Below are positions 19,962-57,950 of a stretch of DNA of 64,000 bases, in pieces. The position numbers were made by a program, and so were the translations under genes. Numbering within the stretch: position 1 is the stretch's first letter; each line of letters starts with the position of its first letter. A model generated the notes under the pieces. The model searched no databases and had not been told where the DNA came from. It saw nothing but the letters and a program-made list of their open reading frames with translations. This DNA is from Selaginella moellendorffii (taxonomy: Eukaryota > Plantae > Lycopodiophyta), in contig NW_003314374.1 in assembly GCF_000143415.4 (NCBI RefSeq), forward strand, positions 145,225 to 209,224. Reading direction: 5' to 3'.

Positions 19962-21548
19962 ATGGATCGGCTGCTAGTGATTGATCCAAAGGAGCTCGTC
20001 TTTGATTTCGAGATTGGGCAGCGATGCAGCAGCTTCGTGATTCTCAAGAATGTCATGTTCACGATGCCGGTGGCGTTCAAGATCACTGCGTCGTCCAATG
20101 CCGGGATGGCCAATTCCAAGAAGTACACGATGAAGCCATCGCAGGGGATCATCTCTCCCGCCGGGAGGGCCACCGTCGAGATCATCCTCAACCCCCAGCA
20201 ATCCCTCCCGGACGAATTCCCAAACTCGCTCGACAAGTTCGTCGTCAAGAGCTTGGTGGTTCCCGGCGGGAATCAACACAACAGCGTCTCCAACGAGTGG
20301 TTTGAATCCAAGAAGAACTTCGTCTACGCCGACGCTGGATTGAAAGCCTTCTTCAAAGGATCGGCCATCGTCTCCGCTTTGGTTGCCTCTCCGGATTCGA
20401 CGATGGAAGACGTGCGAGAAGTCCTGGAACGGGGCGTGGACTTGAACAAACCCGGATCCAGCGGCCCGGATCGATCCCCGCTCCACGTCGCCATAGCTAG
20501 CGGACGGCCCGAGATGGTCCAGCTCCTTCTCGAGTTTGGCGCGAATGTTGAGGTCCGGGACAGGTTCGGCAAAACACCGATGCACGAGGCTGCTGCCGCG
20601 GGACAGACGCTAGCCATGGAGCTCCTTCTCGCAAACGGAGCAAACACGGAGGCCCGGACGGAATCCGTCGGATGGACAGCACTCCACTTTGCCACGTACG
20701 CACATCATTTGGACGCGGTTCGAATCCTCTTGGCGAAGGGCGCGGATGTCAACAGCACCGCCGGGCCGGAGGAGCGTACCGCGCTGCACATTGCTACCGC
20801 CGGCGGTGCACAGCGGTGCTTGAAGCAACTGCTCGAGCGTGGTGCCAATCCTAACGCCGTTACCGCCACTGGGCAGACGGCGCTCCACATCGCGGCGGGC
20901 CAGGCCGACGTGGCGGCATCTCGGCTGCTGATCCAACATGGCGCCTGGCGGAATGTGCGGGATTTGAATGGACATATTCCGTTTGACGCCGCGGTGGAGG
21001 CGGGAGCTGATAAGAGCTTGCTCGATCTGCTCAAGCTCGGCGATGATCTCCGGCGCGCAGCCAGGAGGGGCGATCTCAAATCGGTGAGGGTTTGTCTTAA
21101 GCAGGGCGCCGATCCAAACGGGAGGGATGAGAATGGATGGACCGCGCTCCACTGCGCGGCATTCAAGGGGAGTTTGGAAGTGGTGAGGCTCTTGATCGAC
21201 AGGAATGTCGATGTGAATTGCGAGGATTGCGAGGGATACTCGCCGCTCCACTGCGCGGTGGAGATGGGGCACAGCGAGATCGTCCAGGTTTTGATGAGGA
21301 GAGGGGCGGATGTGAATGCCAAGATCAAGAAAGGGTGTTGTGCGGTCAAGATTGGGAGCTTGATGGGCGAGGATGGAATCGTGGGATTGCTGCTGGACGG
21401 CGGCGCAAGGGACGCGAGATCGTTGGTTAGTAGCGTCTCCACAATAAATTTGGGGAAAATCCGCGGTAGCGATGATTCGTCTCTCAAAAAGAAGAAGAAT
21501 GGCGAGAGGTTTCCAAGATCCAGGACATTGAGCTGCGAAGCCTATTGA
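19962..21548 (+). CDS. VPY: VAPYRIN (N-terminal MSP/VAP domain + ankyrin repeats), intronless
   Basis: MDRL..GQRC..LKNVMFTMPVAF..KPSQGIISP..EWF..KK.V N-terminus typical of VAPYRIN, followed by ~9 ankyrin repeats (TPMH/TALH/SPLH). Confidence 0.9.
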   Translation: MDRLLVIDPKELVFDFEIGQRCSSFVILKNVMFTMPVAFKITASSNAGMANSKKYTMKPSQGIISPAGRATVEIILNPQQSLPDEFPNSLDKFVVKSLVVPGGNQHNSVSNEWFESKKNFVYADAGLKAFFKGSAIVSALVASPDSTMEDVREVLERGVDLNKPGSSGPDRSPLHVAIASGRPEMVQLLLEFGANVEVRDRFGKTPMHEAAAAGQTLAMELLLANGANTEARTESVGWTALHFATYAHHLDAVRILLAKGADVNSTAGPEERTALHIATAGGAQRCLKQLLERGANPNAVTATGQTALHIAAGQADVAASRLLIQHGAWRNVRDLNGHIPFDAAVEAGADKSLLDLLKLGDDLRRAARRGDLKSVRVCLKQGADPNGRDENGWTALHCAAFKGSLEVVRLLIDRNVDVNCEDCEGYSPLHCAVEMGHSEIVQVLMRRGADVNAKIKKGCCAVKIGSLMGEDGIVGLLLDGGARDARSLVSSVSTINLGKIRGSDDSSLKKKKNGERFPRSRTLSCEAY

Positions 21549-39137: not shown

Positions 39138-40070
39138 ATGGCCGATCCGCAATCTCCTCCTTTGACTCTAGAGCAGCAGTTGGTTCAATTGCTTGATGCT
39201 ATGCGCCTGCAATTGAACAACCAAACTCAGTTGATGGCGGCGTTCACGGCACATGGTACAACTCCTCTTGCTTTTGGTGCCAATCCTCGCGTTCGGCCGG
39301 AGTTCTTTCTTGGGAATCCTGGGGATGATGTGTACTATTGGTTCGATCACTTCACGGTGATTGCCACATATCATTCTTGGGATGATGCTCGACGTTTGCG
39401 TGAGTTCCCCACATGTCTTCAAGGGACGGCATTGCAGTGGTACAATGGATTGAGCGCAGCTACTCGTGGCGATTGGAGTGTTCTTCCGGACGTCTTCAAA
39501 CGCGCCTTTGGACACGCCGACGATTGTGATGATGCCTTCCAACAATTGCATCGTCTTCGCCAAGGGCCATCTGAGTCGGTGATGCAATTTGGCGTTCGTT
39601 TCCGAAGTCTTTTGCTTCGTGCGGAGCCAAATATGTCGGAGCGGATCAAGCTAGGAATGCTGTGGCCAGCACTTCGTCAAGATCTTGTCGGACTTGTGCA
39701 TGCACTTGCTCCTGCCACTCTTGACGATGCTCTTCGCTTGGCACAACGTTATGAGACGTCGCCTCTTCCACTTCTTGCTACACGTCCTTCAGCTCCACTT
39801 CCTATGAGTGATGGTCCTGTTCCCATGGAGGTTGATGCTACTGCTACTTGAGTCCAAGGACAAGGGCGAGGACGTGGTCGTGGCCGTGACATTCGTTGCT
39901 AGGCGTGTGATGAAGTTGGTCATACTTATCGGCGTTGTCGGCGCTTTCCGGATTGGCGACCTCCATTTCCTGGGTGGAGACCTTGGCGTCAGCAACGTCC
40001 CGTTGGTGCTGCTGCAGTGGAAGGTTTGGATACCGAGGTGCATTCGGGAAACGAGGAGTCGCGCGAGTAA
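39138..40070 (+). CDS. gag: Retrotransposon gag (in-frame stops at 39849 and 39900)
   Basis: Capsid motifs LQGTALQWY, LRQGPSESV.QF. The frame continues through an RG-rich tract and knuckle C*ACDEVGHTYRRC to TAA at 40068. Confidence 0.85.
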
Positions 40071-43000
40071 TGGAGGGACCTTGCGCGAATAAGTTAGTGA
40101 CCCCTCCATCTTTCTTTCGGGAGTATCATCAAGGGGTTCACTCGGCACCGGTTCATCCAGTGTTTACTTTCCAAGCTCGTTTTTATAACAAGAGGTCTCC
40201 TATTCTTCTCTCCGTGTTGGTTGATACAGGTTCGAGTTTATCTTCTATTGCTCGACCTGTTGCCACACGTTGTCGTCTACACTTGCGTCGTGCGGCGGAT
40301 CCAGTTTTCATTCTTTATGGCAACGGCCGTACACATGCATGTGCACGAGATGAGGCGGACCTGGTTGTGCGTGTGGGCGATCTCGAGCTTGAGTTGCAGT
40401 CGTTGCGGGTGGTGCCGAGTCAAGCTTTTGACCTCATTTTTAGTATGGATTGGTTGCAGCACAATCATGCCAAGTGTGACTTTGAGGCTTTTCCCCCTTG
40501 TCTCATACTTCCTTATGTTTCATCCATTCCTCTCACTTCCGTACCTCTTCGTCCCTCTACTTCTACCTCTGCTTCCATTACTTTTGTTCCCCAATTATTT
40601 CCTCTTGTGTTTCCATCTTGTTCTGCTCTTCCCTTTTCCGATCCCTCCGATGATCTTTGTGTTGCAGCTGTTGACCAGCTCATGAAGGAGTATTCTGATC
40701 TCTTTGAATTTGACCTATCGTCTGGGGCCAAGATTGCCACACGTCATCCCATTCCAACCGGGGATGCTCGTCCAATCAAGGTTCCTGTTCGTTGTCGGTC
40801 ACCCAAGGAGATCAAGATTTTACGTGCAAACGTCAAGGAGATGTTGGAGAAGGGTGTTATTCGGAAGTCGCGGAGTCCTTGGGCATGTGAACCTCATCTT
40901 GTGACGAAGCCTGATGGGAGTATTCGTTTCTGCATCGACTATCGTCCGTTAAATGAAGTGACGATCCCGGACGTGTACCCTCTTCCTCACACTGCTGATC
41001 TCTTGGATCGTCTGGGGCGAAGTCGTTGGTTCACCAAGCTAGATCTTGCTTCTGGGTATTGGCAAGTACCGATGGCTGAAGACGATATTCCTAAGACTGC
41101 TTTTCGTACACCATTTGGTTTGTACGAGTTTTTGGTGATGCCATTTGGTTTGAACAATGCTCCAGCAACTTTTCAGCAAATGATGGACGAGGTTCTTTGC
41201 GATATGCCGGAGGTGACGGCTGACTTCATTGATGATGTCTTGATCCAGTCGGAGGGGACGTGGGAGGAGCATGTTTGTGATGTTTGTAAAGTGTTGGATC
41301 GGCTACGCGACGTTGGTTTAAAGCTAAAGCGGTCGAAGTGCGTGTTTGGGTCCAAGGACACAACTTATCTTGGGTACCGTATTTCTCGTGAGGGTTTGCA
41401 AGTTGATCCTGACAAACTTGTGGCTGTTCTAAAGTTCCCTACTCCGAAGTGTGTGAATGATGTGCAGCGCTTTTTGGGTAAGGTGCAGTATCTCGGTCGT
41501 TTTGTGGATCATCTTTCCGATCGCACTTTACCATTGCGAGCATTGCTGAAGTCATCAACGTCATCTTTCATCTGGTCTCCCGATTGTGAGCGGGCGTTCG
41601 TGAATCTCAAAGAGCTATTGACGACTCCTCCGGTTTTGGCATATCTTGACTACACTCGACCTTTTATTTTGCGCGTGGATGCTTCTGACATTGGTCTTGG
41701 AGGTGTGTTGATGCAAGAGAGCTCGAGTGTGCCTGGTCAGCGCCATCCCATTGCATACATAAGCCGTACATTACAACCAGCGGAGATGAACTACTCCACG
41801 ACGGAGAAGGAGTGTTTAGCAGCAGTCTGGGGTTTCGAGAAACTTCATGCCTATCTACATGGTTCTCGGACGTTACTTGAAGGTGACCATGCTGCTGTTA
41901 CTTCATTATTGAAGCGGAAGAACCTGGTTGGTCGTACGGCTCGATGGGCTTTGAAGCTTCAGATATATGATTTTAATGTTGTTCATCGCCCAGGGAGTTC
42001 TATGGCTGATGCTGATGCCCTTTCTCAAGCTCCTCTTCCTTCTCCACTCACTTCTCATGTTTCTGACGAACCTGTTGTTCCAGCATCTGTGGATTTTCTA
42101 GATGAGGATTCTGTGCCGTCGGCGGTTGCTGTCCTTGACGTTCAGTGTCCACAGGGCGTAGAGCAAGATCTACCTTCTCTGGATGAGGTTCGCGAGGCTC
42201 AAAAGATTGAGCCGTGGATTCGAAGGCTTCGAGATGGGTTTGAGAATCCTGCATCACTTGCTGATGACTTGCCTTTTCGGCATTTACATTCTCAATATCG
42301 CCTTGAAGATGGCCTTCTTTATTTTGTGGGGACGGATCCTGATGCTCATTTACGGCTGGTGGTGCCTTCGGTGTTTATTCCGCGGTTTCTCCATGCCTAC
42401 CATGATTCTCCTATTCTAGGTGGGCATATGGGACACCGTCGTGTCACCGAGAAGTTGCGCAGATCTTTCTATTGGCCAGAGATGCGACGTGATATTATCC
42501 GGTATGTGCGTAGCTGCGTTTGGTGCCAAGCTCGTAATACTCCCCCTTGTGCTGCGGAAGGACGGTTGGAGTCAATTGCAGTTTCTCGTCCGTTTGAGTT
42601 GGTGGCGTTTGATCTTATGGGACCTTTTCCGCGATCGACTGCTGGCAATGAGTATGTTATTATTGCTTCTGAGTACTTGACTCGTTGGGTGGAAGTTGGT
42701 GCTCTTGCTAGTGCCTCTACAACTGCTGTTGGATACTTCCTCCTCAATCGAGTGGTGTTCCAGCATTCTTGTCCAGAACGGATTCTTTCGGATAATGGTC
42801 CTGCATTTATGGCTGAGGTATTTCATGTTTTGACATCTCGGTTGGGGATACGCCACACTTTTACGAGTGCTTATCATCCACAATCAGACGGTCTGGTGGA
42901 ACGACTCGTTCGGACATTCAAAGGGATGATTGCGAAGTATGTGAACTTTCAACATTCGGATTGGGATGGTTATTTGCCGTCTCTTCGGTATGCTTATGTC

Positions 43001-43534
43001 ACAGGGGTGCAGAGTTCTGTTGGTGCTTCACCATATAAACTTCTATATGGTCATGATCCAATATTACTAACAGAGCTAGGTTTACCTTCGCGATTGCCAC
43101 GAGCTCCTGATGCTAGGTCATGGGATCAATATTTGACAAGCATTCTTCCACTTGTCCGAGCAGAGTCTGCTGAACACTTAGGCCGCGTACAAGTGGGACA
43201 ACAACAGCACTACAATTCCCATCATCGTCCACCAGCGGAGTACAAAGTGGATGATTTGGTGTTAGTCCGTTTTCCCCATCTTACGGTACGTGGTTTATCT
43301 AAGGGGCTCCTTGCGCAGTGGAAAGGACCGTATCAGGTGTTGCGGCAAGTTGGACCACAAGTTTATGAGGTTCGGCATGACGTTCAGCAGGCCGATCCTC
43401 CGGAGATTGTGCATGTGCAGCGGTTAAAACGCTTCATACAGAGGGATCAGGAGCAGTTAATACCGTCTACAGATCCACCGATGCCTCCTCCTGACGTTCC
43501 TCCAGATCCCGGCCCATCTACAAGAGAACCTTGA
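40046..43534 (+). CDS. pol: Retrotransposon pol (PR-RT-RH-IN), open frame entered by -1 frameshift
   Basis: VDTGSS, FCIDYRPLN, LDLASGYWQ, FIDD, VDASDIGLGGVL, HHCC, SDNG, GLVER, KGPY. No chromodomain. Confidence 0.95.
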   Translation, partial: GKRGVARVMEGPCANKLVTPPSFFREYHQGVHSAPVHPVFTFQARFYNKRSPILLSVLVDTGSSLSSIARPVATRCRLHLRRAADPVFILYGNGRTHACARDEADLVVRVGDLELELQSLRVVPSQAFDLIFSMDWLQHNHAKCDFEAFPPCLILPYVSSIPLTSVPLRPSTSTSASITFVPQLFPLVFPSCSALPFSDPSDDLCVAAVDQLMKEYSDLFEFDLSSGAKIATRHPIPTGDARPIKVPVRCRSPKEIKILRANVKEMLEKGVIRKSRSPWACEPHLVTKPDGSIRFCIDYRPLNEVTIPDVYPLPHTADLLDRLGRSRWFTKLDLASGYWQVPMAEDDIPKTAFRTPFGLYEFLVMPFGLNNAPATFQQMMDEVLCDMPEVTADFIDDVLIQSEGTWEEHVCDVCKVLDRLRDVGLKLKRSKCVFGSKDTTYLGYRISREGLQVDPDKLVAVLKFPTPKCVNDVQRFLGKVQYLGRFVDHLSDRTLPLRALLKSSTSSFIWSPDCERAFVNLKELLTTPPVLAYLDYTRPFILRVDASDIGLGGVLMQESSSVPGQRHPIAYISRTLQPAEMNYSTTEKECLAAVWGFEKLHAYLHGSRTLLEGDHAAVTSLLKRKNLVGRTARWALKLQIYDFNVVHRPGSSMADADALSQAPLPSPLTSHVSDEPVVPASVDFLDEDSVPSAVAVLDVQCPQGVEQDLPSLDEVREAQKIEPWIRRLRDGFENPASLADDLPFRHLHSQYRLEDGLLYFVGTDPDAHLRLVVPSVFIPRFLHAYHDSPILGGHMGHRRVTEKLRRSFYWPEMRRDIIRYVRSCVWCQARNTPPCAAEGRLESIAVSRPFELVAFDLMGPFPRSTAGNEYVIIASEYLTRWVEVGALASASTTAVGYFLLNRVVFQHSCPERILSDNGPAFMAEVFHVLTSRLGIRHTFTSAYHPQSDGLVERLVRTFKGMIAKYVNFQHSDWDGYLPSLRYAYVTGVQSSVGASPYKLLYGHDPILLTELGLPSRLPRAPDARSWDQYLTSILPLVRAESAEHLGRVQVGQQQHYNSHHRPPAEYKVDDLVLVRFPHLTVRGLSKGLLAQWKGPYQVLRQVGPQVYEVRHDVQQADPPEIVHVQRLKRFIQRDQEQLIPSTDPPMPPPDVPPDPGPSTREP

Positions 43535-43968: not shown

Positions 43969-44713
43969 GTGATGCGGTCTTATGCCTGCATAAGATTTCC
44001 CGTTTAGCTTTTGGTGGTTTGACCACAAACACACGAGCTTACCTCCGGGCAGGCGCAGACAGGATCACAGAGTTTTTCACGTCTTCCTCACTGCAAATCT
44101 CCACTTATAAAAATAGTGAAGAAAGCAGATTGGACAGTTCCTGTGCCGCTCTGTGAACCTTCGACCTCTTCTTAAAATAAGTACTCACCTCTTGCAAGAT
44201 GTTCGTATGTTTTTCCTATGGCTCGATGTTGAAGCTGGGTATGAATGCGCAGCCAAGTGCAGTGTCCGTGTCCGCACTCGCATAGCAAGTTGACGAGTGC
44301 CAAGTTGAGTCCTCGAGGTTGTACGCATATGGAGCATACGCGTACAGAGTCTCGTAGCAATCCGAGAAAACTATTGTGCTCCCAACAAGCAGTGCCTGGA
44401 TATGGAAGTGTTCTCTCGACGGCTTCTTGCCATACAGCTCTTTGTACCGTCTGCTTGACAAAACCTTCCACTCTCCTGCCACAGTGTCCAGCTCCCAGAC
44501 CACCACGCTGCTAAACGAGTGCGTCACCATGAAACTCCTGTCTTTCCACCTCAAGACTCCACATAAGGAAGTGGCCTCACGGCCATACTCCTGGTAGACG
44601 TAACCATTGTGGGGAACTGGATCACGATCATCAACGAAGTGCTTATGGCAAGACCAGGCCATGGAATCTGGATCGTAGGCCATGAGAAAGTATGGCTGGT
44701 ACTCGAGGCCCAT
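43969..44713 (-). pseudogene. Inverted partial copy (3' half + downstream flank) of the F-box gene at 54662
   Basis: The 165-aa ORF is largely identical to the C-terminus of the 374-aa F-box protein but lacks the F-box motif. Confidence 0.9.
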
Positions 44714-44764
44714 GGTATGCTTGTTCGGTATAAAACGCGCGTTTCATCAGGCTTTGTCGCTGAG

Positions 44765-45066
44765 GCCCTCATCAGCGAAACCACACAGCTTGTCCAGTGA
44801 TGTCAAAAGACGTAGAAATTGCCGAAGCGGATCCGTTTCGCGTTCAATACCAGCCTCAGTAACTTCAGCTGCAATTAAACTGCAAATATAACCCGCACCT
44901 GAGCAGCATTGTTTTCTATAACTATTCGAGCATCCTTGGATGAACGCCCTGAAATCTAGAGACACGAGCGAGCACACGTAAAACCAGCATCAAAAAGTAA
45001 ACGGCTTACTGTTGTCCCTGAAGGGGCTTGTCGGCATCCGTAAACCGTTCAGCTGAAACTTTACAA
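44765..45066 (-). pseudogene. Deletion-riddled Fd-GOGAT fragment with intron sequence
   Basis: Patchwise match to 35050-35700 in the same orientation as the parent gene. Confidence 0.85.
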
Positions 45067-45119
45067 ACAGAATGCACAAAGACGCAGATATCTAAAGACG
45101 AAAAGAACCGAGATATTCA

Positions 45120-46196
45120 TTTCTGAGACGTAAAATGGTCGTACGACATAAGACCGGGAAGTTTAGCCAGAACACAAGGCTCCACGAGAAGCATTCCTGG
45201 GAAAAGAAAATAACATTTTTTCTCTGACGGAATGTGATGAGCCATACCTGGATCAACGAACTTCTTCCGTGAAAGCCTCTGCTTATTTTTATTTCTAGTC
45301 AATCGCCGACCTGTTCAAAATGGTAGAGCAGTGATTATAAAGAGAATACGATTGAAACGAAACGTACATTTTTATTCTGCACTGTAGTACTCAGAGGTAG
45401 CGTTTTCCGCTTCCTCCTCTTCCCTCTTCTTCTTCCAGTTCCAGTTCTGGTTTCTCTTCCTCTTCCACTTCCACTCCCACAATGCGCATCACGCTTTCCT
45501 TCAAAGCCGTTCTTGCTTCCTCATTCTCTGGGAGGAGTGCCATTGCTTTCTTGATCAGCTTCAAGTACAGCTAAAAGGTAAAAGAAGTTAACAAAACGAA
45601 AACAAAGTTAAGAAAGATGGAAAACATACCTCAACACCATTTTCTTCCTCCAAATGCACATTTCGCTGCAGCCGTACATCGTATGCACTGAGATATCCCA
45701 GGCTCGCCAAAATTCACTCGCTCAGTGGAGCTGGGATGTCCTTAGACGTCTCAACGTGAAATTCCAGTAGCCGCAAGGCACAGGTCGAGATGTCAACTCC
45801 CCGGTGTGATTTTCTCTCCATCCTACACGCATTTCTTGTGTGTGAGAGAGAACACAAGGATAACACTCACTGAACCGCAAATCTGAGAAGATCTTCTCTC
45901 ACTTCCTTCGGCGTGAGTCGAGCTGTGAAATCCCGAAAACGTGTGTTACCAAAGGTAAAATCTACTAGATTGATTGAGTGCGGCAGTGCGGATCCTTGTC
46001 CATTCTCTGGCTCAGATTCTGGTGCAGGCAGGCCAGGCGTAGCAAGATCACTGCGCGGAGCTGCAAAATCCCGAGAATGTCGCAAGGGCGTATATCTGAT
46101 TGGAGTACCTGGAGCAGATCGGTCGAGCGCAGCAAGATCTTTCGGCGGCAGCGCAGCAGATCCCGGCGGGCCGCTCGATTTTCCCCGCCGCGCCAT
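45120..46196 (-). pseudogene. Decayed paralog of the uncharacterised gene at 49453-51136
   Basis: EVREDLLRFAVQ|MERKSHRGVDISTCALRLL..HLEEE..|LYLKLIKKAM..SEYYSAE with the same intron positions. TGA at 45714-45716 and a frameshift in the poly-E tract. Confidence 0.7.
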
Positions 46197-46494
46197 CTCT
46201 CCCCGCCCGACCGAAACTTACGACTATCATTTTAGGGCTTCCTCCATGGCAATCTTCGCGATCACGCTTTCTAATTAAGAAGGGCGCTGTAGAGAAGTGA
46301 CGTTGCCTTGCCCGATGAGTCCAACTGTGAGTGTTTTTAGCTATCTGTGAAGTCTTCAATCGTGAAGGTATCGAGATTTTGGGTTCCAGTTCACGTTTCA
46401 GTTTTGCGAGAGTAGGCCTTTACATCAACTTTTTTTTATTTTCACAGTCGGAGGTAAGCTGAAAACGTTTATCTTAAAACTGGAGCTGCTGAAG

Positions 46495-46645
46495 TCCGCT
46501 ATCTCAGCTAGCTTTTAATGAGGAGCGAGAGGCTTTGTCCATCGATAGGTTCCTGATTTCTCTCACTTTTTATGAGCATGGGATGGACCTGCATTTTCAG
46601 GTGTCAAGTTAATTTTGAAACTTCTTTGGTATGTGAGGTAATAGG
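46495..46645 (+). pseudogene. Small remnant of an inverted Fd-GOGAT copy
   Basis: TATCTCAGC..TTTTAATGAGGAGCG and GCATGGGATGGACCTGCATT match rc of 36150-36380. Confidence 0.55.
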
Positions 46646-46920
46646 TTCCATCCTGCTCGATATCTTTTGAAGTCTAGAAAAACATTATCAGTGCTAATGT
46701 CAAGGATCTGCTGCTTGTTGAGTCTTATGGGACACTATTGTAATGGAGGAAAAACATTTGGAAATCTTTATCTATGATATCATCGCAAGTATCACTGCCC
46801 TCAAGCATGGATATTAGTATGGGCTTTAGAAAACGGTTCACTAACTTCGTTTTGGATTAAGGTAACGTGGTTAGTTAGTAATAGAGACAATTGCTCACAA
46901 GTAGTTCACAATTACAGTGC

Positions 46921-48572
46921 TGCCAAAGAAGATTTATAGAGAACCAATCAAGTAATATATGTACTTTACCATTATAATTACACTGGAAAACAAATAGTTA
47001 AAATGTTTTTGAGAGACTGTGCGCAAGTAGAGCCTGCACCCATGCAATAGCATATATATCGATTGAGCATTTTGGATAGCAATAGCAAGCTCAAAATGCG
47101 TTTAAAATCTAGCTCGTGGGCTGAAAAATGCGCGTCCACAAGTTAACATGTAAAAAAAATGACATGGTGCAAAAAATTGCATATGTGACATGGTGTTAAT
47201 CTGGATTTTGCCATGTATATATGGAGATCACCAATACATTCCCATGCATAAGGAAATTAGTTATAGTTTTATAACTATATAACTTAGCTATGGAAATTAT
47301 AATTCCTTATAATGGTGAAATTATATAAGCATAGAATAAAGTTGAGGTGTGTAAGAAAATAATGAAGTTAAGGTGTATTTTATTTTCAGATGATTTCAAG
47401 TATGTAAAGAGTATTATATGATTTTGTTCTAATTATTATTCAGGTTTTATATTAGTTCTAAGTATCTAGTTCTATACAGAAAAAAATTTTAAAAATAGTT
47501 TGAATATTAACTATCCAGTTAAATAGATTGAGATAAAATCCAATAGTTACAGAAATTATTTATAATTTATATAGTGATTAGTGCTCAAATGTATATCACT
47601 AATAACTTAAGTAATAGAATAGAATATATGAGAATAATATATCAAGAATAAATATACTTTGAAAGAAATTAAAATTTTCTATGCTAAAAATATATGCTAC
47701 CCTTTTATTTGATCAAAGGTGGCTTTGTTTTTCAAAGCTAAGTCAAGTTTTTAGTCAAGTTTATCTTAGTTTTGTTTCTCTCTCCCTCTCTATTTTGTAA
47801 GATATCTGTATGCATTTACATCAGGTGGCTTGGCATATATAAGATACATTTTATTACTTTGTTTTCTTATATAATAATGTATTGTTCCTAGTAATTACTA
47901 GCTAATATTTTATCTGATATTTTTTGCCGTGATAAGTAAAATTACCTAAACAATGTTCGTGGGAGGTTCAATTAGATTAAGGTAGTAAGAAGTTGAGAGT
48001 GTTCCTGTCGAAAGACAGCGACACCGAAGTCTGCATGTAAGAGTAAGAGCAATGCCTGTAAGAGCAATCTGAGGTTGAAGAGAAGGAGGAAACGCAGAGG
48101 GCTACAGAGGTGAACGCAGGAAATGTGACTCACAGAATTTCCTTACTCGAGCTTGCACAATTCTCCCGAGAGCTCTTCCCTCCGCAGGAAATCGCCCACT
48201 CAGCGTTCCTTCGGCAGCAGCAGCCTCTCTAGCATCCACAAATCGCGGAAGAAACATATTTTTCTGCAATGGAATGTTGTAGACCTTGAGCGTCGGTTGA
48301 CAGAGGAGCCGACACTCCTCGGTGGATTACCTTCCTAGCTGGGATAATCTCTTGTGCGTCACAGCTCTGTTGCTACCAATCTGTGCAAGTCGTAGCTTGG
48401 CATGGTAAGAGCAGATCGGGCGTGATGCAATCTTATGCCTGCGTAAGTTTTCCCCTATAGATTTTGATGGTTTGTCCTCAACCACACGAGCTTACCTCGA
48501 GGATTGCAGAGTTTTTCACGTCTTCCTCACTGCAAATCTCCAGTCATAAATATAGTGAAGAAAGCACATTGG
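46921..48572 (-). repeat. Left arm of a ~1.6-kb inverted repeat (partner 55875-57562)
   Basis: Continuous reverse-complement similarity, e.g. 47041-47093 vs 57401-57453. Confidence 0.9.
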
Positions 48573-48585
48573 AAACATCAAAAGC

Positions 48586-48656
48586 TATCTGAGCTTTATT
48601 GCTAAGATTATCAAAAACAGCAAGTTTTTGATAATCTTAGCAATAAAGCTCAGATA
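48586..48656. repeat. Perfect hairpin: 33-bp stem, 5-nt loop
   Basis: TATCTGAGCTTTATTGCTAAGATTATCAAAAAC-agcaa-GTTTTTGATAATCTTAGCAATAAAGCTCAGATA. Confidence 0.98.
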
Positions 48657-49452
48657 CTAGCAAAGTGCCTGTATACACTTTGTGCAAGCTTTTCAGCCAA
48701 GAACAACACATGGACTGGGGCTTATACGAGTGATCGTAATCGTCCAGGCTATGGACCTTGGATGCCGCGGCCTATTCATGTGAGACAGTGTGACAAAGCC
48801 AGCGAGATGGAAGTAATCTCGTTTACACATGAAGCTTGCCAGTGTCCTCCGAAAGAGATTCCCACAAGTAAGGCTTTCCACCGAAATGCAGGTAAGAAAA
48901 CCATTGACAAGGATTCGTAATTTACCAAGGCAAGTTGAACGGCAGAGTGTATGGCTTTGCTTCGAGACAAGCAAGCGTTCGATACTGCCTCTGTGAACTT
49001 GGTCATGGTGGCCAAGTGTGATTTCATCTGCTCGCAGGATTGAGCTTACGTTCTTGTCACATGGATCGAAACTAGGAATGTTTACGTCGCATTGCTTTTG
49101 CGATGAGATTTCTAAGCCCAAAGCGCAAAAGTCTTTTCTAAAAGATTTGCATCGTCTCTAAGAGTTACTTGCATCGGATCCACTCCGGCTCAAGAGGTCA
49201 GCAGTAGTGCTGCTTAAGATCAAAATCCATGGCCATTACACGACGCAAGATCTTCCACCGTAGACTTTGCCTTCGTGCAACAAGCAGAAAATCTCCGCCG
49301 TTCCCTGCAACGAATCAGAATGTCTTGTGAATATTCCCGGTCTGGGCAATATCCCGCCCAGAGAGCAAGAGATAGGGCATTTAGTGTGAAGAAGGTAGCG
49401 AGAGTGATAGGGTTTTGTAGAGAGAGCGCTAGGCGGAGAAGCACCGCCGACT

Positions 49453-51136
49453 ATGTCGACGCGTTCCGGGCACATCGCGGACTCATCGCCGACGCACACT
49501 CGCCACTCCGACAGGATTCTGGTGGGTTCAACCTCCGGCGTGGTCTGCCGGGATTTCCAGCGCGGGAGGTAAGTGGAAAGCTCGATTTGATCGATTTTGA
49601 GCTTGATTTCTTGTCTTTCCAGCTGCCGCTTTGGTTCGCACTGCAAATTTGTCCACCGGCAGGTCGCGGATCCAGTCTCATCGAATCGCAATGTGAGTTC
49701 TTTGCTATCTTCTTTCTCTCAGGCCTGAAACCTTTCAGGTGCGCACTGTGACCTCGGGTCCTCGGATTCTGGTGAGTTCTTTTTGGCGATCTAGCTGCCC
49801 AGGCCTGAAAGTAAAAATTCTTATAGGACACTATGGCGAACGCCGAGAGGCCATCACCAACTACGCCACGGGTCCGTGCTATGCCATCCAGCTCCAGCCC
49901 GGAGCAGCAGGGAAATGAAGATAAAGGCGTTCCACAAGGTATTTGCTCTATCGGTTGACCGTGATTCCTGTCTATTGTCTTGTGTGATATCTGTAGATCG
50001 AGAGTGTTTTCTTGTTGGTTTTATGTGGATGGATGCCTGTTCGTTAGTTCTTTTCATTCTTTTTTTTATTCTTCTGTACACAGGCTTTCGTTTGAAGAGA
50101 GGCATGGCGCCTGGAGTGGAATCAGTGGCACCTGTTGTGCCCGACCCGGCTGAAGAGACTCAGGAAGAATTTCGGAAGGCGATTTTGCAGTATGCCACGC
50201 AGTAAGTACTATTTCTCTTAAGCCCTCTCTTTCTTTGTCTTCTCGTAATCCTCGTTTATCCAGGATGGAAAAAAAGATGCACAGGGGCGTTTCTTTGCAG
50301 GCTTGCTCTCTCGGGCTGCTGGTGAGGCATATCAAGCGCTGCCCCGACATTAGTCCTGCGTTAAAGAGCTTGCTGCATTCCCGGATTGACAACATTTCGC
50401 TGGAGCCGTGCTCAGTTACGTATCAACATAAATGCCATCTCGATGAAGAGGCGGCGCTACAGGTAAATTCTTCGTGCGTAATTTGGTTTCTTGTAACTGT
50501 TCTAATTTCTCAGCACTATTCCAAATTCATTGACGAGGCACTCTCCATGCTGGAAGAAGAAGAGGCTTTGGAAGACCTCCGTGCAAGTATCAAGAAAGTG
50601 AAAGACAAGTCAGCTGTGGCCCCTTCTGTCGCCCCTTCCACCCGCTGTTTTGAGGCCAGCGTGAACAGGTACCATGTTTTTTTCCATTCCAACTCTGTGT
50701 CTATCTATCTTAGTCCTGCCCCTACACTGGCAGCGTTGCTTCTACCCTCCAACCACGCCGTCGTCGTGCTTCGAAGATCAAAGCTGCTGAAGAAGAGAAC
50801 TTGTCTGCCGAAGAGGAAGAATACTTCTCGGCCGATGAAATTTTTGAAGACGAATCCATGGTAAATTAATAAAAAAGGGGGCTAACTTTTTTTTTGTTTT
50901 GTTTTTTTTTGTTAGATTCTTCGCCTCAAGCTATTACACTTGCAGCAACTTGCCAAATATGTGGTGTCCATGGCGGCTTTGATGTACGAATATGTGAGGT
51001 AATTCAATTCTATACTAATTTTTTAGCTTGATTGTTTTTATTTTCTATTAGCCTCAATTTGGCACATGTCAACCCTCTCCTCAAGCAGCTAGAAAAAATA
51101 AAAAACGAGCTTAAGGAAGCTCTAAACAATCTGTAA
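49453..51136 (+). CDS. Uncharacterised 10-exon gene (~365 aa): CCCH zinc finger, unknown helical domain, acidic FFAT-like motif, C-terminal coiled coil
   Basis: Exons 49453-49568, 49623-49692, 49739-49771, 49827-49938, 50084-50201, 50264-50462, 50514-50668, 50734-50860, 50916-50998, 51052-51136 join via GT-AG introns into a stop-free frame containing CRDFQRGSCRFGSHCKFVH. Confidence 0.75.
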
Positions 51137-51159
51137 GTGGCTTTTGATCAATCGATTTG

Positions 51160-53700
51160 AAATTTTTTTGCATGTTTTGCTCGGCTGGTAGTCTTTCTCA
51201 GAAAGTGAGACAAACTTCTCTCTTTCGTGTTCTCTAATGTTCCAGTTGGCCGACCAAGGTACACAACTGAAGAACCTTCTAACTTCTTTTCCAAATTTCC
51301 AGGTGAGCAAGGAGATTGTAGAATGCAAGGTAAGAACCAGTCTTGTCCTGAGAAGCACGAGGAAAAAAATTTGAGAAAAACCAATCCAGTACTTTGTCTC
51401 TCTTCTCCAAAACTGGGAGGCGTTTCTGCCTTTAATGAGGAGCGGACAAAGCCCAGAAGCAACTCTGATGATTCTCGTTCCAGAGGCTTATAAAAATCAC
51501 TGTCCAACAAGTATCCAGAGGTTAACAGCAGCTGATAAGTTACTGATTTCTCCGTTCTGCATCAGGTTATTGATTTTTACGAGTATTACAAAGGAAGCAT
51601 GGGATGGATTTGCATTGTTACTGATGGAAGTAAGTATGCTATTTATTTCGAACTGAACAGGCTCTAAAGTAGTCTATCTCAGCTTTTAATGAGGAGCGGA
51701 CGAACCCGGGAAGAAACTCTGATGATTCTCGTTCCAGAGGCTTACAAAAATCACCCTACACAAGTATCCGGAGGTTTGTTATGCCAACAGCAGCTGATTT
51801 GTTGTCTGTACCAGGTTATTGACTTTTACGAGTATTACACAGGCCAGATGATGGAAGTAAGTATGCTATTTATTTCGAACTGAACAGCCTCTAAAGTAGT
51901 CTATCTCAGCTTTTAATGAGGAGCGGAGGAACCCGGGAAGAAACTCTGATGATTCTCGTTCCAGAGGCTTACAAAAATCACCCTACACAAGTATCCGGAG
52001 GTTTGTTATGCCAACAGCAGCTGATTTGTTACTTATTTCTCCGGTCTGTACCAGGTTATTGACTTTTACGAGTATTACACAGGCCAGATGGAAGCATGGG
52101 ACGGACCTGCATTGCTCCTTTTCAGGTACAAGCTAATTTATTTCAAAGGAAGACGTTCCTTAACGGATGTATTTGAAGTGATGGGAGGACAGTTGGCGCT
52201 TGCCTTGATCGAAACGGTCTGCTCGATATTGGGAAACGAAGGATGGAATGGCTTCTGAGGTATGGAAGCACGTTACCTCTAGCTATACTTGACGAGAACT
52301 AAAACCATGCCCTTACGTAGGTTGGTTCTGATATCATCTCCGAAGGTCGTTTATAGACCCTGGGATGATGATAGCCATAGGCTTGAACTCTGGAAAGGCA
52401 AGAATAAGAACATGCTCTGCATTTGTGATAACGTGCTGAGGCTACAGGTATCCGAAAATACGGAGGTGAAAAAGAGGGTCGCTCTTTCACATCCTTATCG
52501 CCAATGGAAAAGCCGTCCCCTTCCTGTTTGTAAATTTTCAGCTGAACCGTTTATGGACACTAACAAGCTCCTTCAGAGACAGCAGTAAGCCGTTTATTGT
52601 TTTACGCTAGTTTACGTGTGCTCATGTCTCTAGATTTCAGGGCATCTGGGTATTCATCTGAGGGTGTCCAAATGGTTACAGAAAACATGACATCGCAAGG
52701 CAAAGAGTCGTATGGGGGACGATATCCCTCTGGCTGTTCTGTCTCAGAGAGAGAGAGGTCATGTGCTGTTTGACTATTTGAAGCAAAGATTCGCTCAGGT
52801 AATGAGAACAGATTTTGCAGGCAACAAATCCTCCCATTATCCTTTACGGGAGGTGTCTCTTGACATGAATACTGGAAAGCGAGAAAACCTTCTGGAAGAA
52901 AAAGCTGAGAATGCTGCTCAGGTGCGGGTCATAATTGCGGTTTAATCATCTGGCTGTTGTCTTGCATGCGCAGCTGAAGTTAGTGAGCCCGGTATTGAAC
53001 GAAGGAGAGCTCGAAACTTTGAAGACGGATCCAGTTTTGAAGGCTTCGACAATTCCAACGTTCTTTGACATTAGTAATGGACTTGAAGGATCACTTTCTT
53101 CTGCTGGACAAGCTGAAGGTGCTGATGAGGCTGTACGTGGAGGATCGCAGCTTTTGATTTTGAGCGAGGCAACAGAGCGAATGAACTGGTATGCTTGTCT
53201 CGCTGAAGTTCTCGGTATTAAACGCTCGTTTGAAGTGTAGGTAAAGCCTGCCATACCGATGCTGCTTGTGGTACACCACCACCTTATTCAGAACGGACTT
53301 CGCGCGTCAGCATCTCTGATACTGCCCAATGCTTTTGTACACAGACTTCTTGGCTTATGGTACTATCATTTTAACCTTTGAACCTTGCCCTTAGAAACGT
53401 GTTGTCTTCAGGTGACGACAGAAGGGGCGCGGCAACAGAAACTTTAACAAGCCAATTAAAATGTTAGTATGCAGGTCGACAATTGTCTCGATATGGGAAT
53501 TCTCTTGTATCAAGGTATGCAATTCCGCAGGATACTAGGATCAACAAAATAATTATTTGTTCTAACACTGTGGAAATAACCCGAAGGTGTCGAAGCTTCT
53601 CCACAGAGCAGTTCGTGAGAAGAATGAGAGCGCGTACGCTGTATATGAGTTACCGACTGTAGATGATTTTCTTGAACGTCTTAACTTGATTTATAGGTCC
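51160..53700 (+). pseudogene. Scrambled, mostly inverted partial duplicate of Fd-GOGAT with introns and an internal triplication
   Basis: 51857-53700 is the rc of ~33930-36425 with deletions. [20 protein letters not shown] occurs three times. Short pieces of the GLU 3' end lie at 51170-51395. Confidence 0.92.
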
Positions 53701-54661: not shown

Positions 54662-55786
54662 ATGGAGCGCCTAACGGAGGATTTGTTGCTCCGGGTGTTT
54701 GCGAGCCTGGAGCTTGACGATCTAGGGAGGCTGCGATGCGTTTGTAGATCCTGGGACAGCGCCATTACTTCTCACGAATTCGCCAAGCAATGGAAGGGAA
54801 GGGACGAGGTCTGTTGTGTCTTGCGCACTAAGGACAGCATCCACAGAGAAGTGTGGTTCCCGGGCAGCGGCGCAAGAAGATCTACCGGATTGAATCCAGG
54901 GCCTCGTGGGTGTTTCTCCATTGGGGTTTCTTCGTCACACGGCCTGGTTTGCGGATTGCTACCAGAAGAGGGCCGCTACTGGAACACGCCTGACACAGCA
55001 TGGAAATTTGTGGTAGGAAATCCATTGACAAACAAATGGAGGCGGTTGCCTCCAATCGATATCCCTTCTCGTCCGCTCTACACCATGGAAAGGATCCATC
55101 TCCAGGCTGATCCGTCCAAAGGTTCCTACAAGCTGGTCATCACCTACAGTGAAGATGGCGTTGACTACCAAGTGATCTACCAGGCGCGCCAGTATGATTC
55201 AGAGTCGCGGGTTTGGACCTCGGCAGTGCCCTTTATTGGCGAGCACGATTGCGCAAACACGAAGATTGATGGCTCCATGATTGGAAGCGCGGGGCTCCAG
55301 TACCCTCCATACTTTCTCATGGGCTACAATCCAGATTCCATGGCCTGGTCTTGTCACAAGCACTTCGTTGGTGGTCGTGATCCAACTCCCCTCAATGAGT
55401 CTGTCTACAAGGAGTATAAGCTTGACAGCACCACCTTATGCGATGTCTTGAGGTGGAGAGGCAGGAATTTCATGGTGACGCACTCGTTTAGCTGCGTGGT
55501 GCTCTGGGAGCTGGACACTGTGGCAGGAGAGTGGAAGGTTTTGTCAAGCAGGCGGTATAAGGAGCTGTATGGCAGGATGCCGTCGAGAGAAAACTCGGAG
55601 ATCCAGGCGCTGCTTGTTGGGAGCACAATAGTTTTCTCGGATTGCTACGAGACCCCGTACGTGTATGCGCCATATGCGTACAACCTCGAGGACTCAACTT
55701 GGCACTCGTCAACTTGCTGTGCGAGTGCGGACACGGACACTGCACTTGGCTGCGCATTCATACCCAGCTTCAACATCGAGCCATAG
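54662..55786 (+). CDS. F-box protein (intronless, beta-propeller-like C-terminus)
   Basis: F-box motif LTEDLLLRVFASL..LGRLRCVCRSW; SSSHGLVC, VGNPLTNKWRRLPP, YDSESRVW. Confidence 0.92.
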   Translation: MERLTEDLLLRVFASLELDDLGRLRCVCRSWDSAITSHEFAKQWKGRDEVCCVLRTKDSIHREVWFPGSGARRSTGLNPGPRGCFSIGVSSSHGLVCGLLPEEGRYWNTPDTAWKFVVGNPLTNKWRRLPPIDIPSRPLYTMERIHLQADPSKGSYKLVITYSEDGVDYQVIYQARQYDSESRVWTSAVPFIGEHDCANTKIDGSMIGSAGLQYPPYFLMGYNPDSMAWSCHKHFVGGRDPTPLNESVYKEYKLDSTTLCDVLRWRGRNFMVTHSFSCVVLWELDTVAGEWKVLSSRRYKELYGRMPSRENSEIQALLVGSTIVFSDCYETPYVYAPYAYNLEDSTWHSSTCCASADTDTALGCAFIPSFNIEP

Positions 55787-55874
55787 GAAAAGCATCTTGC
55801 GAGAGGTGAGTACTTGTTTTAAGAGAGGACGAAGGTTCAGCACAGGGGCGGTCCAAAGGTGGGACTTTTCTTTG

Positions 55875-57562
55875 TGCTTTCTTCACTGTTTGCATAACTG
55901 GAGATCTGCCGTGAGGAAGACGTGAAAAACTCTGCGATCCTGCCTGCGCTTGCGCCGAGGTAAGCTCGTGTGTTTGAGGACAAACCACCAAAATCTAAAG
56001 AGGAGAACTTATGCAGGCATAAGATCGCATCACGCCCGATCTGCTCTTACCACGCCAAGCTACGACTTGCATAGCAACAGAGCTCCTGTCAACCGACGCT
56101 CAAGGTCCACAACATTCCACTGCAGAAAAGCATGTTTCTTCCGCGATTTGTGGATGCTGGAGAGGCTGCTGCTGCCGAAGGAACGCTGAGTGGGCGATTT
56201 CCTGCCGAGGGAAGAGCTCTCGGGAGAATGTGGATTGAAGGCATTGTGTGTAAATACTTCATTATTTATTGAAACATTATACTAAACACTACTTTAAACC
56301 ACTGATCTGAAGAGAATGTACTAATATCTAGAGGTGATCCTCAGGCTGAATTTCTGCTGCCGCCGTGGGCGAGTGAGCTCTACCGGAGCTCTTTCCTGCC
56401 GCGACGTGCAAGCTCGAGTAAGGAAATTCTGTGAGTCACATTTCCTGCGTGCACCTCTGTAGCCCTCTGCGTTTCCTCCTCTTCAACCTCAGATAGGCAT
56501 TGCTCTTACTCTTACAAGCAGACTTTCCTGTGTCGCTGTCTTTCGACAGGAACACAAATTAACAATGTCTCATACTACCACTTAATCTAATTGAACTTCC
56601 CACAACCTTGTTTAGATAATTTTAGTAATTACTAGCTCATTTATATTAATAATTATTTTAAATATTTTATCTCATATTTTTGCCGTGATAAGTAGGAACA
56701 ATAAATTATTATATAAGAAAACAAAATAATAAAATGTAGCTTATATATGCCGAGCCACCTGATGTATGTACACAGATATCTTATGAAATAGAACTAGAAT
56801 AAACTTGACTTAGCTTTGAAAAACAAAACCACCTTTGATCAAATAAGAGGGTAGCATATATTTGTTAGCATAACAAATTTAATTTCTTTCAAAGTATATT
56901 GATTCTTGATATATTATTTTCATGTATTCTATTTCTATTACTTAAGTTATTAGTGATGTATATTTGAGCACTAATCACTATATAAATTCTAAATCATTTC
57001 TGTAACTATTTGATTTTATCTCAATCTATTTAACTGGATCGTTAATATTCAAACTATTTGTTTAATTGTTTTCTGTATAGTACTAGATACTTAGAACTAA
57101 TATAAATAATTAGAAAAGTTACCTCACCTCAACTTTATTCTATTCTTATATAATTTCACCATTATAAGCAAGTATAATTTCCATAGCTAAGTTATATAGT
57201 CATAAAACTATAACTAATTTCCTTACATATGGGAATGTATTGGTGATTGCCGAGGCAAAGTCTAAATTAACACCATGACATATATGCAATTTTTTGCACT
57301 ATGTCTCTATATCTTCTTTTTTTTTTTTTTTTTGATATGTTAGCTTGTGGATGCACATTTTTCAGCCCACGAGCTATATTTTGAATGCATTTTGGATGGC
57401 TGAGCTTGCTATTGCTATCCAAAATGCTCAATCGATATATACACTATTGCATGGGTGCAAGCTCTTCCCAATGGCTACATTTTAACTATTTGTTTTCCAA
57501 TGTAATTATAATGGTAAAGTACATATATTACTTGATTGGTTCTCTATAAATCTCCTTTGGCA
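55875..57562 (+). repeat. Right arm of the ~1.6-kb inverted repeat
   Basis: rc of 46921-48572, with an extra ~180 bp near 56225-56405. Confidence 0.9.
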
Positions 57563-57950
57563 CTTTGTCTTGTGGACAGTGATATACCTATGATTGGAAA
57601 AATATACGAGTGTATAAATAAGTTGGATGCAAGTTTAGAAGAAGGACAGTCAAATTCAGGTAGGTACATGGAACTTCATCAGATCATGTCTAACCAGTGG
57701 CATGAGTATCATTCACTTATGCACTCGGTAGTATATATACTAGACCCCGAGTTTCAAGAGCATGAAAAGCATGCCAATAGAGAAGTTATGAAGGATTGGA
57801 ATGCTTATCTATTGGCCATGTTTACATCCAGTGAGAGGGACGTGATACAGGATGAGTTTTTAATTTACAAGAGGATAGGAGGCATTTTGAACTCAATTGA
57901 TGCTAAGGTTAATCACATTAAAAAGGGAGTTGTATGTTGGTAGGAGGATT
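57536..57950 (+). mobile_element. hAT-type transposase fragment, cut by an LTR insertion
   Basis: LVDSDIPMIGKIYE...W.EYHSLMHSVVYILDPEF...VVCW pattern of plant hAT transposase C-terminal halves. Confidence 0.7.

What the first reader, a model, noticed from the sequence alone, without database searches (positions are those of the whole stretch)
49453..51136. Hidden 10-exon gene: CCCH zinc finger + unknown domain + FFAT-like motif, with a diverged paralog
Seen: the ORF track misses this gene, but canonical micro-introns join it into a stop-free ~365-aa frame, with a C-x7-C-x5-C-x3-H finger split across intron 1. A paralog at 45120-46196 keeps two intron positions, the ME.K.HRGV..C.L.LL core, and an acidic tract ending EYFSADE versus EYYSAE. 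Known: FFAT motifs (acidic tract + EFFDAxE-like) bind the MSP domains of ER VAP proteins, and CCCH fingers bind RNA. Inference: a lineage-specific family that could tether RNA to ER contact sites. An MSP-domain protein (VAPYRIN) lies in the same window, possibly by coincidence.
Basis: partly seen in the sequence, partly recalled or inferred. Interest (0 to 1): 0.78.

Follow-up and report, generated by a model that had tools for sequence, protein, structure and literature searches.

The report
Spikemoss-only CCCH zinc-finger gene
This is a real, spliced and expressed plant gene missing from the public protein sets searched; it encodes a small RNA-type zinc-finger protein of a family found so far only in the spikemoss Selaginella, and the proposed link to the endoplasmic reticulum rests on one short, untested sequence motif.

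Summary
The 10-exon, 365-aa model at 49453-51136 (+) is reproduced exactly. Transcriptome-like contigs from four independent studies remove all nine GT-AG introns. ATG 49453 is the first AUG of the transcript, and the TAA at 51134-51136 is the stop.

The only relative in 1.84 billion representative proteins is one Selaginella moellendorffii gene, LOC9633936 ('uncharacterized protein'), called gene C here. It is 61% identical and shares intron positions and the stop, and it sits in the same [gene - GOGAT fragments - F-box] cassette. dN/dS between A and C is about 0.3, so both are maintained as coding genes.

The finger is a canonical C3H1 type; the closest solved match is CPSF30. The middle domain models as a six-helix bundle with no convincing sequence or fold relative and no transposon-protein match.

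The in-window paralog is degenerate. It has no finger and an in-frame TGA, and its EYYSAE lies in a different frame from the exon before it.

The motif (EYFSADE in A, AYFSCEE in C) has Ser at position 4. It could only be a phosphorylation-dependent 'Phospho-FFAT', and an NLS-like basic cluster sits directly upstream. VAP/ER tethering is untested and I rate it unlikely.

The scan had already noted the surrounding cassette on this window (s1-382147).

The parts
49359..49452 (+). 5' UTR (minimum extent)
   Evidence: The X1 1705-nt contig starts at 49359. There is no upstream ATG, and in-frame stops lie upstream of 49453.
49453..51136 (+). Gene A coding region: 10 exons, 9 GT-AG introns, 365 aa, TAA at 51134-51136
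   Evidence: Searches give the model. One search gives spliced contigs in 4 runs of 4 studies. The X1 contig runs unspliced through the GTAAGT at 51133, so the stop stands.
49546..49656 (+). C3H1 (CCCH) zinc finger C32-x7-C40-x5-C46-x3-H50, interrupted by intron 1 (49569-49622)
   Evidence: The paralog's finger matches the solved CPSF30/CPSF4 finger (E 0.0046), MBNL and TTP. Pfam PF00642/PF18044 are on record for the paralog.
49657..50148 (+). Ser/Pro-rich linker, residues about 51-132 (coordinates include introns 2-4). The exon 4 part is nearly identical to gene C.
   Evidence: exon 4 is 88% nt identical; dS 0.13.
50149..50600 (+). Family-specific all-alpha core domain, residues about 133-245 (coordinates include introns 5 and 6)
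   Evidence: 62% identity to P0001/P0002, the only hits of 1.84e9 proteins. dN/dS 0.19. AF2 model of the paralog's core: pLDDT 77.9, six helices. No PDB or Atlas relative.
50756..50782 (+). Basic cluster RRRRASKIK (residues 276-284), NLS-like
   Evidence: Read from the sequence. It is conserved and stronger in gene C: HRRRPRKVKKVKKVKV. The NLS function is an inference.
50789..50854 (+). Acidic tract E287-E308 containing the FFAT-like core E297-Y-F-S300-A-D-E303 (50819-50839) and a second aromatic, IFEDE
   Evidence: The strict pattern occurs in 2 of 200,000 composition-preserving shuffles. Gene C has AYFSCEE-LFEED. S300 lies in an S-x-x-E (CK2-type) context; this is an inference.
50916..51133 (+). 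C-terminal amphipathic helical region (residues 311-365, exons 9-10; coordinates include intron 9)
   Evidence: dN/dS 0.25. Helices in the low-confidence whole-protein model of gene C.
51137..51629 (+). 3' UTR running into Fd-GOGAT fragment repeats, with a spliced 3'-UTR intron at 51511-51565. Several contigs end near 51134-51141.
   Evidence: X1 and X2 contigs, joint 51510>51566; GOGAT-derived tandem repeats.
45120..46196 (-). Degenerate paralog B. Introns 46061-46108, 45823-45870 and 45571-45629. Core MERKSHRGV...PLSE followed by an in-frame TGA (45714-45716). EYYSAE-stop (45375-45395) lies in another frame than the preceding exon. No CCCH finger.
   Evidence: RNA joints 46060>46109 and 45821>45870 come from contigs that differ from the window by 3-6 letters and one inserted G.

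Best explanation
Gene A is a genuine, expressed, selectively maintained protein-coding gene of a small family detected only in Selaginella moellendorffii. It encodes a 365-aa modular protein. The parts, in order, are: one canonical C3H1 zinc finger, a disordered Ser/Pro linker, a family-specific six-helix domain, a basic NLS-like cluster, an acidic tract with a conserved Tyr-Phe-Ser, and C-terminal amphipathic helices. Shown: the gene structure, its transcription and splicing, purifying selection, the finger type, and the absence of detectable relatives. Inferred: it acts as an RNA-binding adaptor. In that reading the finger contacts RNA, the helical parts mediate protein contacts or oligomerisation, the basic cluster directs it at least partly to the nucleus, and the acidic-aromatic tract is a phosphorylation-regulated docking motif whose partner is unknown. 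The gene travels in a duplicated cassette [gene - Fd-GOGAT fragments - F-box] present at least three times. One of those copies (B) is decaying.
For: Model and frame. Spliced contigs in 4 runs of 4 studies, with zero depth between genes. In all, 20 runs of 10 studies hold the stretch, at shares near the exon fraction. First AUG with upstream in-frame stops. The only relatives are P0001/P0002, which are LOC9633936 of S. moellendorffii on GCA_000143415.2. Gene C has the same intron positions and phases in 8 of 9 introns and the same CTG-TAA-GT stop. Identity is 61%. dN/dS is 0.32 overall, 0.19 in the finger region, 0.19 in the core and 0.25 at the C-terminus; none of 1000 bootstraps reached pN/pS >= 1 in these parts. 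Finger similarity to CPSF30, MBNL and TTP fingers. Same cassette at L001.
Against: No function has been tested. A single CCCH finger binds RNA weakly on its own. The nuclear localisation and adaptor role are inferences from sequence only. The 3' UTR intron and the read-through into GOGAT fragments could make part of the transcripts NMD targets. The joined gene A protein itself could not be searched; only its exons and its paralog were. The coverage of other lycophytes in the protein libraries is unknown, so 'Selaginella-only' may reflect sampling or fast divergence.
Confidence: 0.75

Rival explanations
1. One reading: the protein is an ER-contact tether. Its acidic-tract motif is a working (Phospho-)FFAT that docks on the MSP domain of VAP27-type proteins (or VAPYRIN), while the CCCH finger holds RNA.
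For: The core E-Y-F-S-A-D-E has 4 acidic residues in the 7 upstream. It is rare in composition-preserving shuffles (about 1e-5 per protein). Y-F-S and the acidic flanks are kept in gene C despite 61% overall identity. Ser at position 4 sits in an S-x-x-E context, so constitutive phosphorylation is plausible (inference). The region models as low-confidence, probably unstructured. Plant VAP27s do bind FFAT proteins such as ORP2A (PMC9618059, PMC11255254).
Against: Position 4 is Ser, and the unphosphorylated D-to-S version of a conventional FFAT does not bind VAP (PMC7705450). Phospho-FFAT-like scores are common, in about 10% of human proteins (PMC7705450). Positions 1 and 5 change in gene C (A and C). 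A strongly basic NLS-like cluster lies directly upstream in both genes. Conservation across species, one criterion for predicted FFAT-like motifs (PMC8306308), cannot be tested because no orthologs were found. No paper in the library links VAPYRIN to FFAT.
Confidence: 0.12
2. The gene is a passenger or accessory gene of a mobile or repeatedly duplicated DNA segment (transposon-borne or capture-derived), not a host gene with a cellular role.
For: It occurs only inside a cassette with captured Fd-GOGAT fragments and an F-box gene that is present at least 3 times. hAT-like and Ty3/gypsy sequences lie nearby. One copy is decaying. A and C are mosaics, 78-94% identical in the 5' half and 61-77% in the 3' half, which suggests frequent exchange between copies.
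Against: Only three copies were seen, not a high-copy family. No similarity to any transposase or known TE accessory protein was found in sequence or fold searches. Purifying selection acts on the coding parts. Expression is steady across 10 studies.
Confidence: 0.08
3. The locus is transcribed and spliced but yields no functional protein (a young chimeric transcript).
For: The 3' UTR extends into pseudogene fragments and carries an intron 374 nt past the stop. There are no homologs outside one species. Paralog B is transcribed although broken.
Against: Two copies have kept a 335-365-aa frame, nearly all intron positions and phases, and the stop at a synonymous divergence of about 0.8, with dN/dS of about 0.3.
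Confidence: 0.05

Closest known systems
Selaginella moellendorffii LOC9633936, 'uncharacterized protein' (P0001; longer model P0002; L001:8441-9996 on GL377616.1)
   Same: Same architecture (CCCH finger, linker, helical core, basic cluster, acidic Y-F-S tract, C-terminal helices). 61% identity. Eight shared intron positions and phases. The same stop inside a GTAAGT. The same downstream GOGAT fragments and F-box gene.
   Different: The N-terminus is shorter. A's intron 7 is exonic in C. The motif is AYFSCEE instead of EYFSADE. The 3' half is far more diverged than the 5' half. It is annotated, whereas gene A's protein was absent from the protein collections searched.
C3H1 (CCCH) zinc-finger proteins, e.g. 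CPSF30/CPSF4, MBNL, TTP (Pfam PF00642)
   Same: C-x7-C-x5-C-x3-H spacing, with the usual aromatic and glycine positions. The best solved match of the paralog's finger is CPSF4 ZF (E 0.0046).
   Different: There is only one finger, whereas most RNA-binding members use tandem fingers. Nothing else in the protein resembles those families.
Phospho-FFAT proteins (STARD3, MIGA2, PTPIP51, Kv2; Di Mattia et al. 2020, PMC7705450) and plant VAP27 partners (ORP2A)
   Same: Aromatic residues at positions 2-3, Ser at position 4, a small residue at position 5, an acidic position 7 and an acidic upstream flank.
   Different: No evidence of phosphorylation, of cytosolic location or of MSP binding. A basic cluster lies immediately upstream. 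Orthologs are lacking, so conservation could only be tested in one paralog.

Membership tests
C3H1/CCCH zinc finger (PF00642) | Cys-x7-8-Cys-x4-5-Cys-x3-His spacing | tested here: met
   C32-x7-C40-x5-C46-x3-H50 in the spliced frame. The splice across intron 1 is seen in 4 runs.
C3H1/CCCH zinc finger (PF00642) | Sequence similarity to established CCCH fingers / a Pfam model hit | tested here: inconclusive
   Tested on paralog C only. Its exon-2 stretch, which holds the second half of the finger, is 83% identical to gene A's. It matches CPSF4 at E 0.0046. The precomputed Pfam hits PF00642/PF18044 are marked weak for P0002 and listed for P0001. Gene A's own finger is split by an intron and has no reference, so it was not searched.
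Conventional FFAT motif (EFFDAxE) | Acidic residue (D/E) at core position 4 | tested here: not met
   Position 4 is Ser in A (S300) and in C. PMC7705450 states that position 4 is invariably acidic in conventional FFATs.
Phospho-FFAT motif | Ser/Thr at position 4, an aromatic at position 2 and an acidic flank | tested here: met
   A has LSAEEE-EYFSADE and C has TEAEEE-AYFSCEE. The published scoring matrix was not available, so no formal score is given.
Phospho-FFAT motif | Conservation across species | not testable with these tools
   No orthologs were found. There is only paralog-level conservation of Y-F-S and the acidic flanks.
Phospho-FFAT motif | Lies in an unstructured, cytosolic part of the protein; Ser is phosphorylated; binds an MSP domain | not testable with these tools
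   Low pLDDT around the motif in a poor single-sequence model is compatible with disorder but is not proof. Localisation, phosphorylation and binding need experiments.
Winged-helix / LOTUS (OST-HTH) domain (considered for the core) | Alpha/beta winged-helix fold or sequence match | tested here: not met
   The better model is all-alpha with six helices. No such hit appeared in the sequence or fold searches, and no OST-HTH Pfam is on record for P0001.
Transposon-encoded accessory protein | Similarity to a known TE protein; high copy number | tested here: not met
   The exhaustive HMMER search of the core found only gene C. The fold searches gave only generic helical bundles: Foldseek E >= 0.44, VIA Z <= 6.4, Atlas TM <= 0.51. 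No dedicated TE library was available.

The most novel reading that the evidence does not exclude
A Selaginella-specific family uses a CK2-type phosphorylated FFAT-like motif to dock a CCCH RNA-binding protein onto VAP27/MSP proteins at the ER or nuclear envelope. This would be a lineage-specific way of anchoring RNA at membrane contact sites, built on a helical domain with no known relatives.
Probability: 0.1. Interest if true: 0.6.

Novelty: new variant of a known kind. Interest (0 to 1): 0.33.

Why it matters
The result adds a validated, expressed gene that the public protein sets searched do not contain. It also defines a species-restricted CCCH-finger family with an unrelated helical domain. 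The family is under purifying selection yet sits in a repeatedly duplicated, gene-fragment-carrying cassette. That makes it a useful case of how lineage-specific genes arise and persist in a lycophyte. If the acidic Tyr-Phe-Ser motif proved to be a working Phospho-FFAT, it would be one of few plant examples and would link RNA binding to VAP proteins. At present that is only a hypothesis.

Tried and rejected
Word-based protein search with the exon 6-7 read-through ORF found no hits.

The ESM Atlas gave nothing usable, either by features for exon 6 or for the core of gene C; the Atlas's own model of that protein has pLDDT 0.36.

PDB sequence searches with exon pieces and with the core profile gave nothing meaningful.

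The AF2 model of whole gene C as a single sequence had pLDDT 44.8 and was not used for fold search.

A first fragment alignment (A1) was misaligned, and two of its references were in the wrong frame. It was discarded and replaced by A2.

I dropped it after the better model was all-alpha and no fold match appeared.

Complex prediction of the VAPYRIN MSP domain (19962-20366) with the exon 8 peptide returned 'no answer'. It counts neither for nor against binding. No VAP27 sequence was available by reference.

I considered extending the gene past the GTAAGT at 51133 into downstream exons. I rejected this because the contigs run through that site unspliced and because the P0001 model of gene C ends at the same stop.

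The published FFAT scoring matrix could not be obtained; no supplement is held.

Exons were searched by reference, and the annotated paralog served as proxy. The exons were joined only inside local scripts, for the frame check, tblastn against the window itself and the paralog region, the motif shuffle test, and dN/dS.

Full report
**Observation**

The ten exons are 49453-49568, 49623-49692, 49739-49771, 49827-49938, 50084-50201, 50264-50462, 50514-50668, 50734-50860, 50916-50998 and 51052-51136. They join into a stop-free 1098-nt frame of 365 aa. All nine introns are GT-AG and 46-145 nt long. The finger C32-x7-C40-x5-C46-x3-H50 is split by intron 1. ATG 49453 is the first ATG downstream of 49340, and in-frame stops precede it.

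**Expression**

Twenty public runs from ten studies hold the stretch. Their shares of about 0.3-0.54 lie near the exon fraction of the stretch. I laid contigs of four runs from four studies on 45750-51700.
- Eight introns appear as GT..AG joints in the runs.
- The ninth (50861-50915) had its joint row dropped at a T-run. The records of X2 and X6 place 81 letters, which is exon 9, between exon 8 and exon 10, so it is removed too.
- One X10 contig (50831-50944) retains that intron.
- Depth is zero across 46347-48137 and 48536-49331, so these runs behave as RNA although their type is only guessed.
- A 1705-nt X1 contig runs from 49359 to 51510 without using the GTAAGT at 51133. The TAA at 51134-51136 is therefore the stop.
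- The 3' UTR continues into Fd-GOGAT fragment repeats and has a spliced intron at 51511-51565.

**Relatives**

The word search with the exon 6-7 ORF found nothing. The exhaustive HMMER search of 1.84 billion representatives with the core (window:50265-50666) found two proteins, P0001 and P0002, both 62% identical. They are two models of one gene. That gene is named 'uncharacterized protein LOC9633936 [Selaginella moellendorffii]' and lies on GL377616.1 of GCA_000143415.2.

Searching the full-length paralog in 5.8 billion proteins returned only itself. Gene A's own protein is therefore absent from that collection, and no other relative was seen. A loose end (TTGCAAGAGGGAGAGACGG...) translates to LQEGETES of that paralog, so it is transcribed in the same organism.

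**Gene C structure and selection**

Gene C (L001:8441-9996) has nine exons. Eight introns share position and phase with gene A, and A's intron 7 is exonic in C. It ends in the same CTG-TAA-GT.

A and C are 61% identical. Nei-Gojobori dN/dS values are:

| Region | dN/dS |
|---|---|
| Overall | 0.32 |
| N-terminus with finger | 0.19 |
| Core | 0.19 |
| C-terminus | 0.25 |

No bootstrap replicate reached pN/pS >= 1 in these parts. The exon 3-4 linker is almost identical (dS 0.13).

The locus is a mosaic. Exons 1-4, introns 1-5 and the upstream region are 78-94% identical. Exons 5-10 and introns 6-9 are 61-77% identical. The flanking F-box genes are 89.6% identical in protein, with dS 0.12. The cause is either gene conversion of the 5' half and flanks or faster divergence of the 3' half. 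I could not decide between these.

**The in-window paralog B (46196-45120, minus strand)**

The core is homologous: 29% over 100 aa, E 6e-9 against that region. The intron after ...Q|ME has the same position and phase, and RNA joints confirm it. The intron after ...EE..|[HL]Y is shared by sequence.

However, B lacks the finger. It has an in-frame TGA at 45714-45716. It carries its basic cluster, acidic tract and EYYSAE-stop in a different frame from the preceding exon. The contigs on B differ from the window by 3-6 letters per piece and by one inserted G after 45975, so they come from another allele or copy. B is best read as a decaying copy.

**Domains**

The finger of gene C matches solved CCCH fingers of CPSF30/CPSF4 (E 0.0046), MBNL and TTP. 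Pfam zf-CCCH is on record for it. Gene C's exon-2 stretch, which holds the second half of the finger, is 83% identical to gene A's.

The core has no PDB sequence relative. The whole-protein single-sequence model was poor, with pLDDT 44.8. The core alone, with a six-row alignment, gave pLDDT 77.9, pTM 0.67 and six helices. The fold searches gave only generic helical-bundle rows:

| Search | Best result |
|---|---|
| Foldseek PDB | E 0.44 |
| VIA wide | Z 6.4, below the stated helical noise level |
| Atlas | TM <= 0.51 |

No transposon protein appeared. The domain stays unknown.

**The motif**

Gene A has ...RRRRASKIKAAEEENLSAEEE-EYFSADE-IFEDES. Gene C has ...HRRRPRKVKKVKKVKVTEAEEE-AYFSCEE-LFEEDA. 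A strict pattern ([FY][FY][ST][ACSG]x[DE] with at least 4 acidic residues in the 7 upstream) occurs in about 1e-5 of composition-preserving shuffles. So it is not a trivial by-product of composition.

Several points weigh against a working FFAT:
- Position 4 is Ser. Di Mattia et al. 2020 (PMC7705450) show that conventional FFATs need an acidic residue there.
- The same paper shows that a D-to-S peptide binds VAP only when phosphorylated.
- The criteria for predicted FFAT-like motifs include cross-species conservation, a cytosolic location and a disordered context (PMC8306308). None of these could be established here.
- The conserved basic cluster directly upstream looks like a nuclear localisation signal (inference).

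The Ser lies in an S-x-x-E context, so CK2-type phosphorylation is plausible (inference). I put VAP binding at about 0.1.

**Context**

The gene sits in a cassette [gene - Fd-GOGAT fragments - F-box]. The cassette occurs twice in the window, in inverted and rearranged form, and once on another scaffold. It lies next to the parent Fd-GOGAT gene. The scan had already noted this cassette (s1-382147). VAPYRIN (19962-21548) lies about 28 kb away, and nothing connects it to this gene.

**Verdict**

The family is real, expressed, under purifying selection and so far Selaginella-only. The most likely role is an RNA-binding adaptor, possibly nuclear. The FFAT/ER-tether idea remains an untested minority reading. 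Interest is moderate to low: this is a validated orphan-type gene with one known finger, not a new mechanism.

The joined gene A protein was not sent to any search tool. Exons were searched by reference, and the annotated paralog was used as proxy.

Noticed in passing
window 51425-52100 (and on to 52613): Fd-GOGAT exon fragments form a three-copy tandem array (period about 227 nt, copies 88-99% alike). The array is part of gene A's 3' UTR in some contigs, with a spliced intron at 51511-51565.
   Followed up: partly
window 49062-51136 versus L001:8078-9996: Mosaic divergence between gene A and its paralog. Upstream, exons 1-4 and introns 1-5 are 78-94% identical. Exons 5-10 and introns 6-9 are 61-77% identical. 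The flanking F-box genes are about 90% identical (dS 0.12). This suggests gene conversion or uneven divergence within the cassette.
   Followed up: partly
window 43969-48575 and 55291-57562: Sixteen inverted-repeat arms (83-99% complementary) link the two sides of the locus, including a truncated F-box copy (44216-44713 versus 55291-55795). The order of the arms is not a simple mirror image.
   Followed up: no
window 48138-48535: Contigs of three runs lie here with loose ends on both sides (48320, 48351). This is a transcribed piece of a repeat that continues differently elsewhere in the genome.
   Followed up: no
window 50831-50944: One run (X10) has a contig that retains intron 8 of gene A, at about a third of the depth of the spliced contig.
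   Followed up: no
window 19962-21548: Intact single-exon VAPYRIN-type ORF (MSP domain plus ankyrin repeats, 528 aa). Its MSP keeps some but not all residues that I recall as FFAT-contacting in animal VAPs (from memory, not tested).
   Followed up: partly
window 2514-6415, 39138-43534, 57536-57943: Two Ty3/gypsy-type retrotransposon coding regions (one with a 1199-aa pol ORF) and a hAT-transposase-like ORF fragment.
   Followed up: no
L001:8441-11983: The public model P0002 (628 aa) fuses the paralog to downstream GOGAT GXGXG fragments by splicing at the GTAAGT that contains the family's stop codon. By analogy with gene A's unspliced contigs, the shorter model (P0001) has the better 3' end.
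   Followed up: partly
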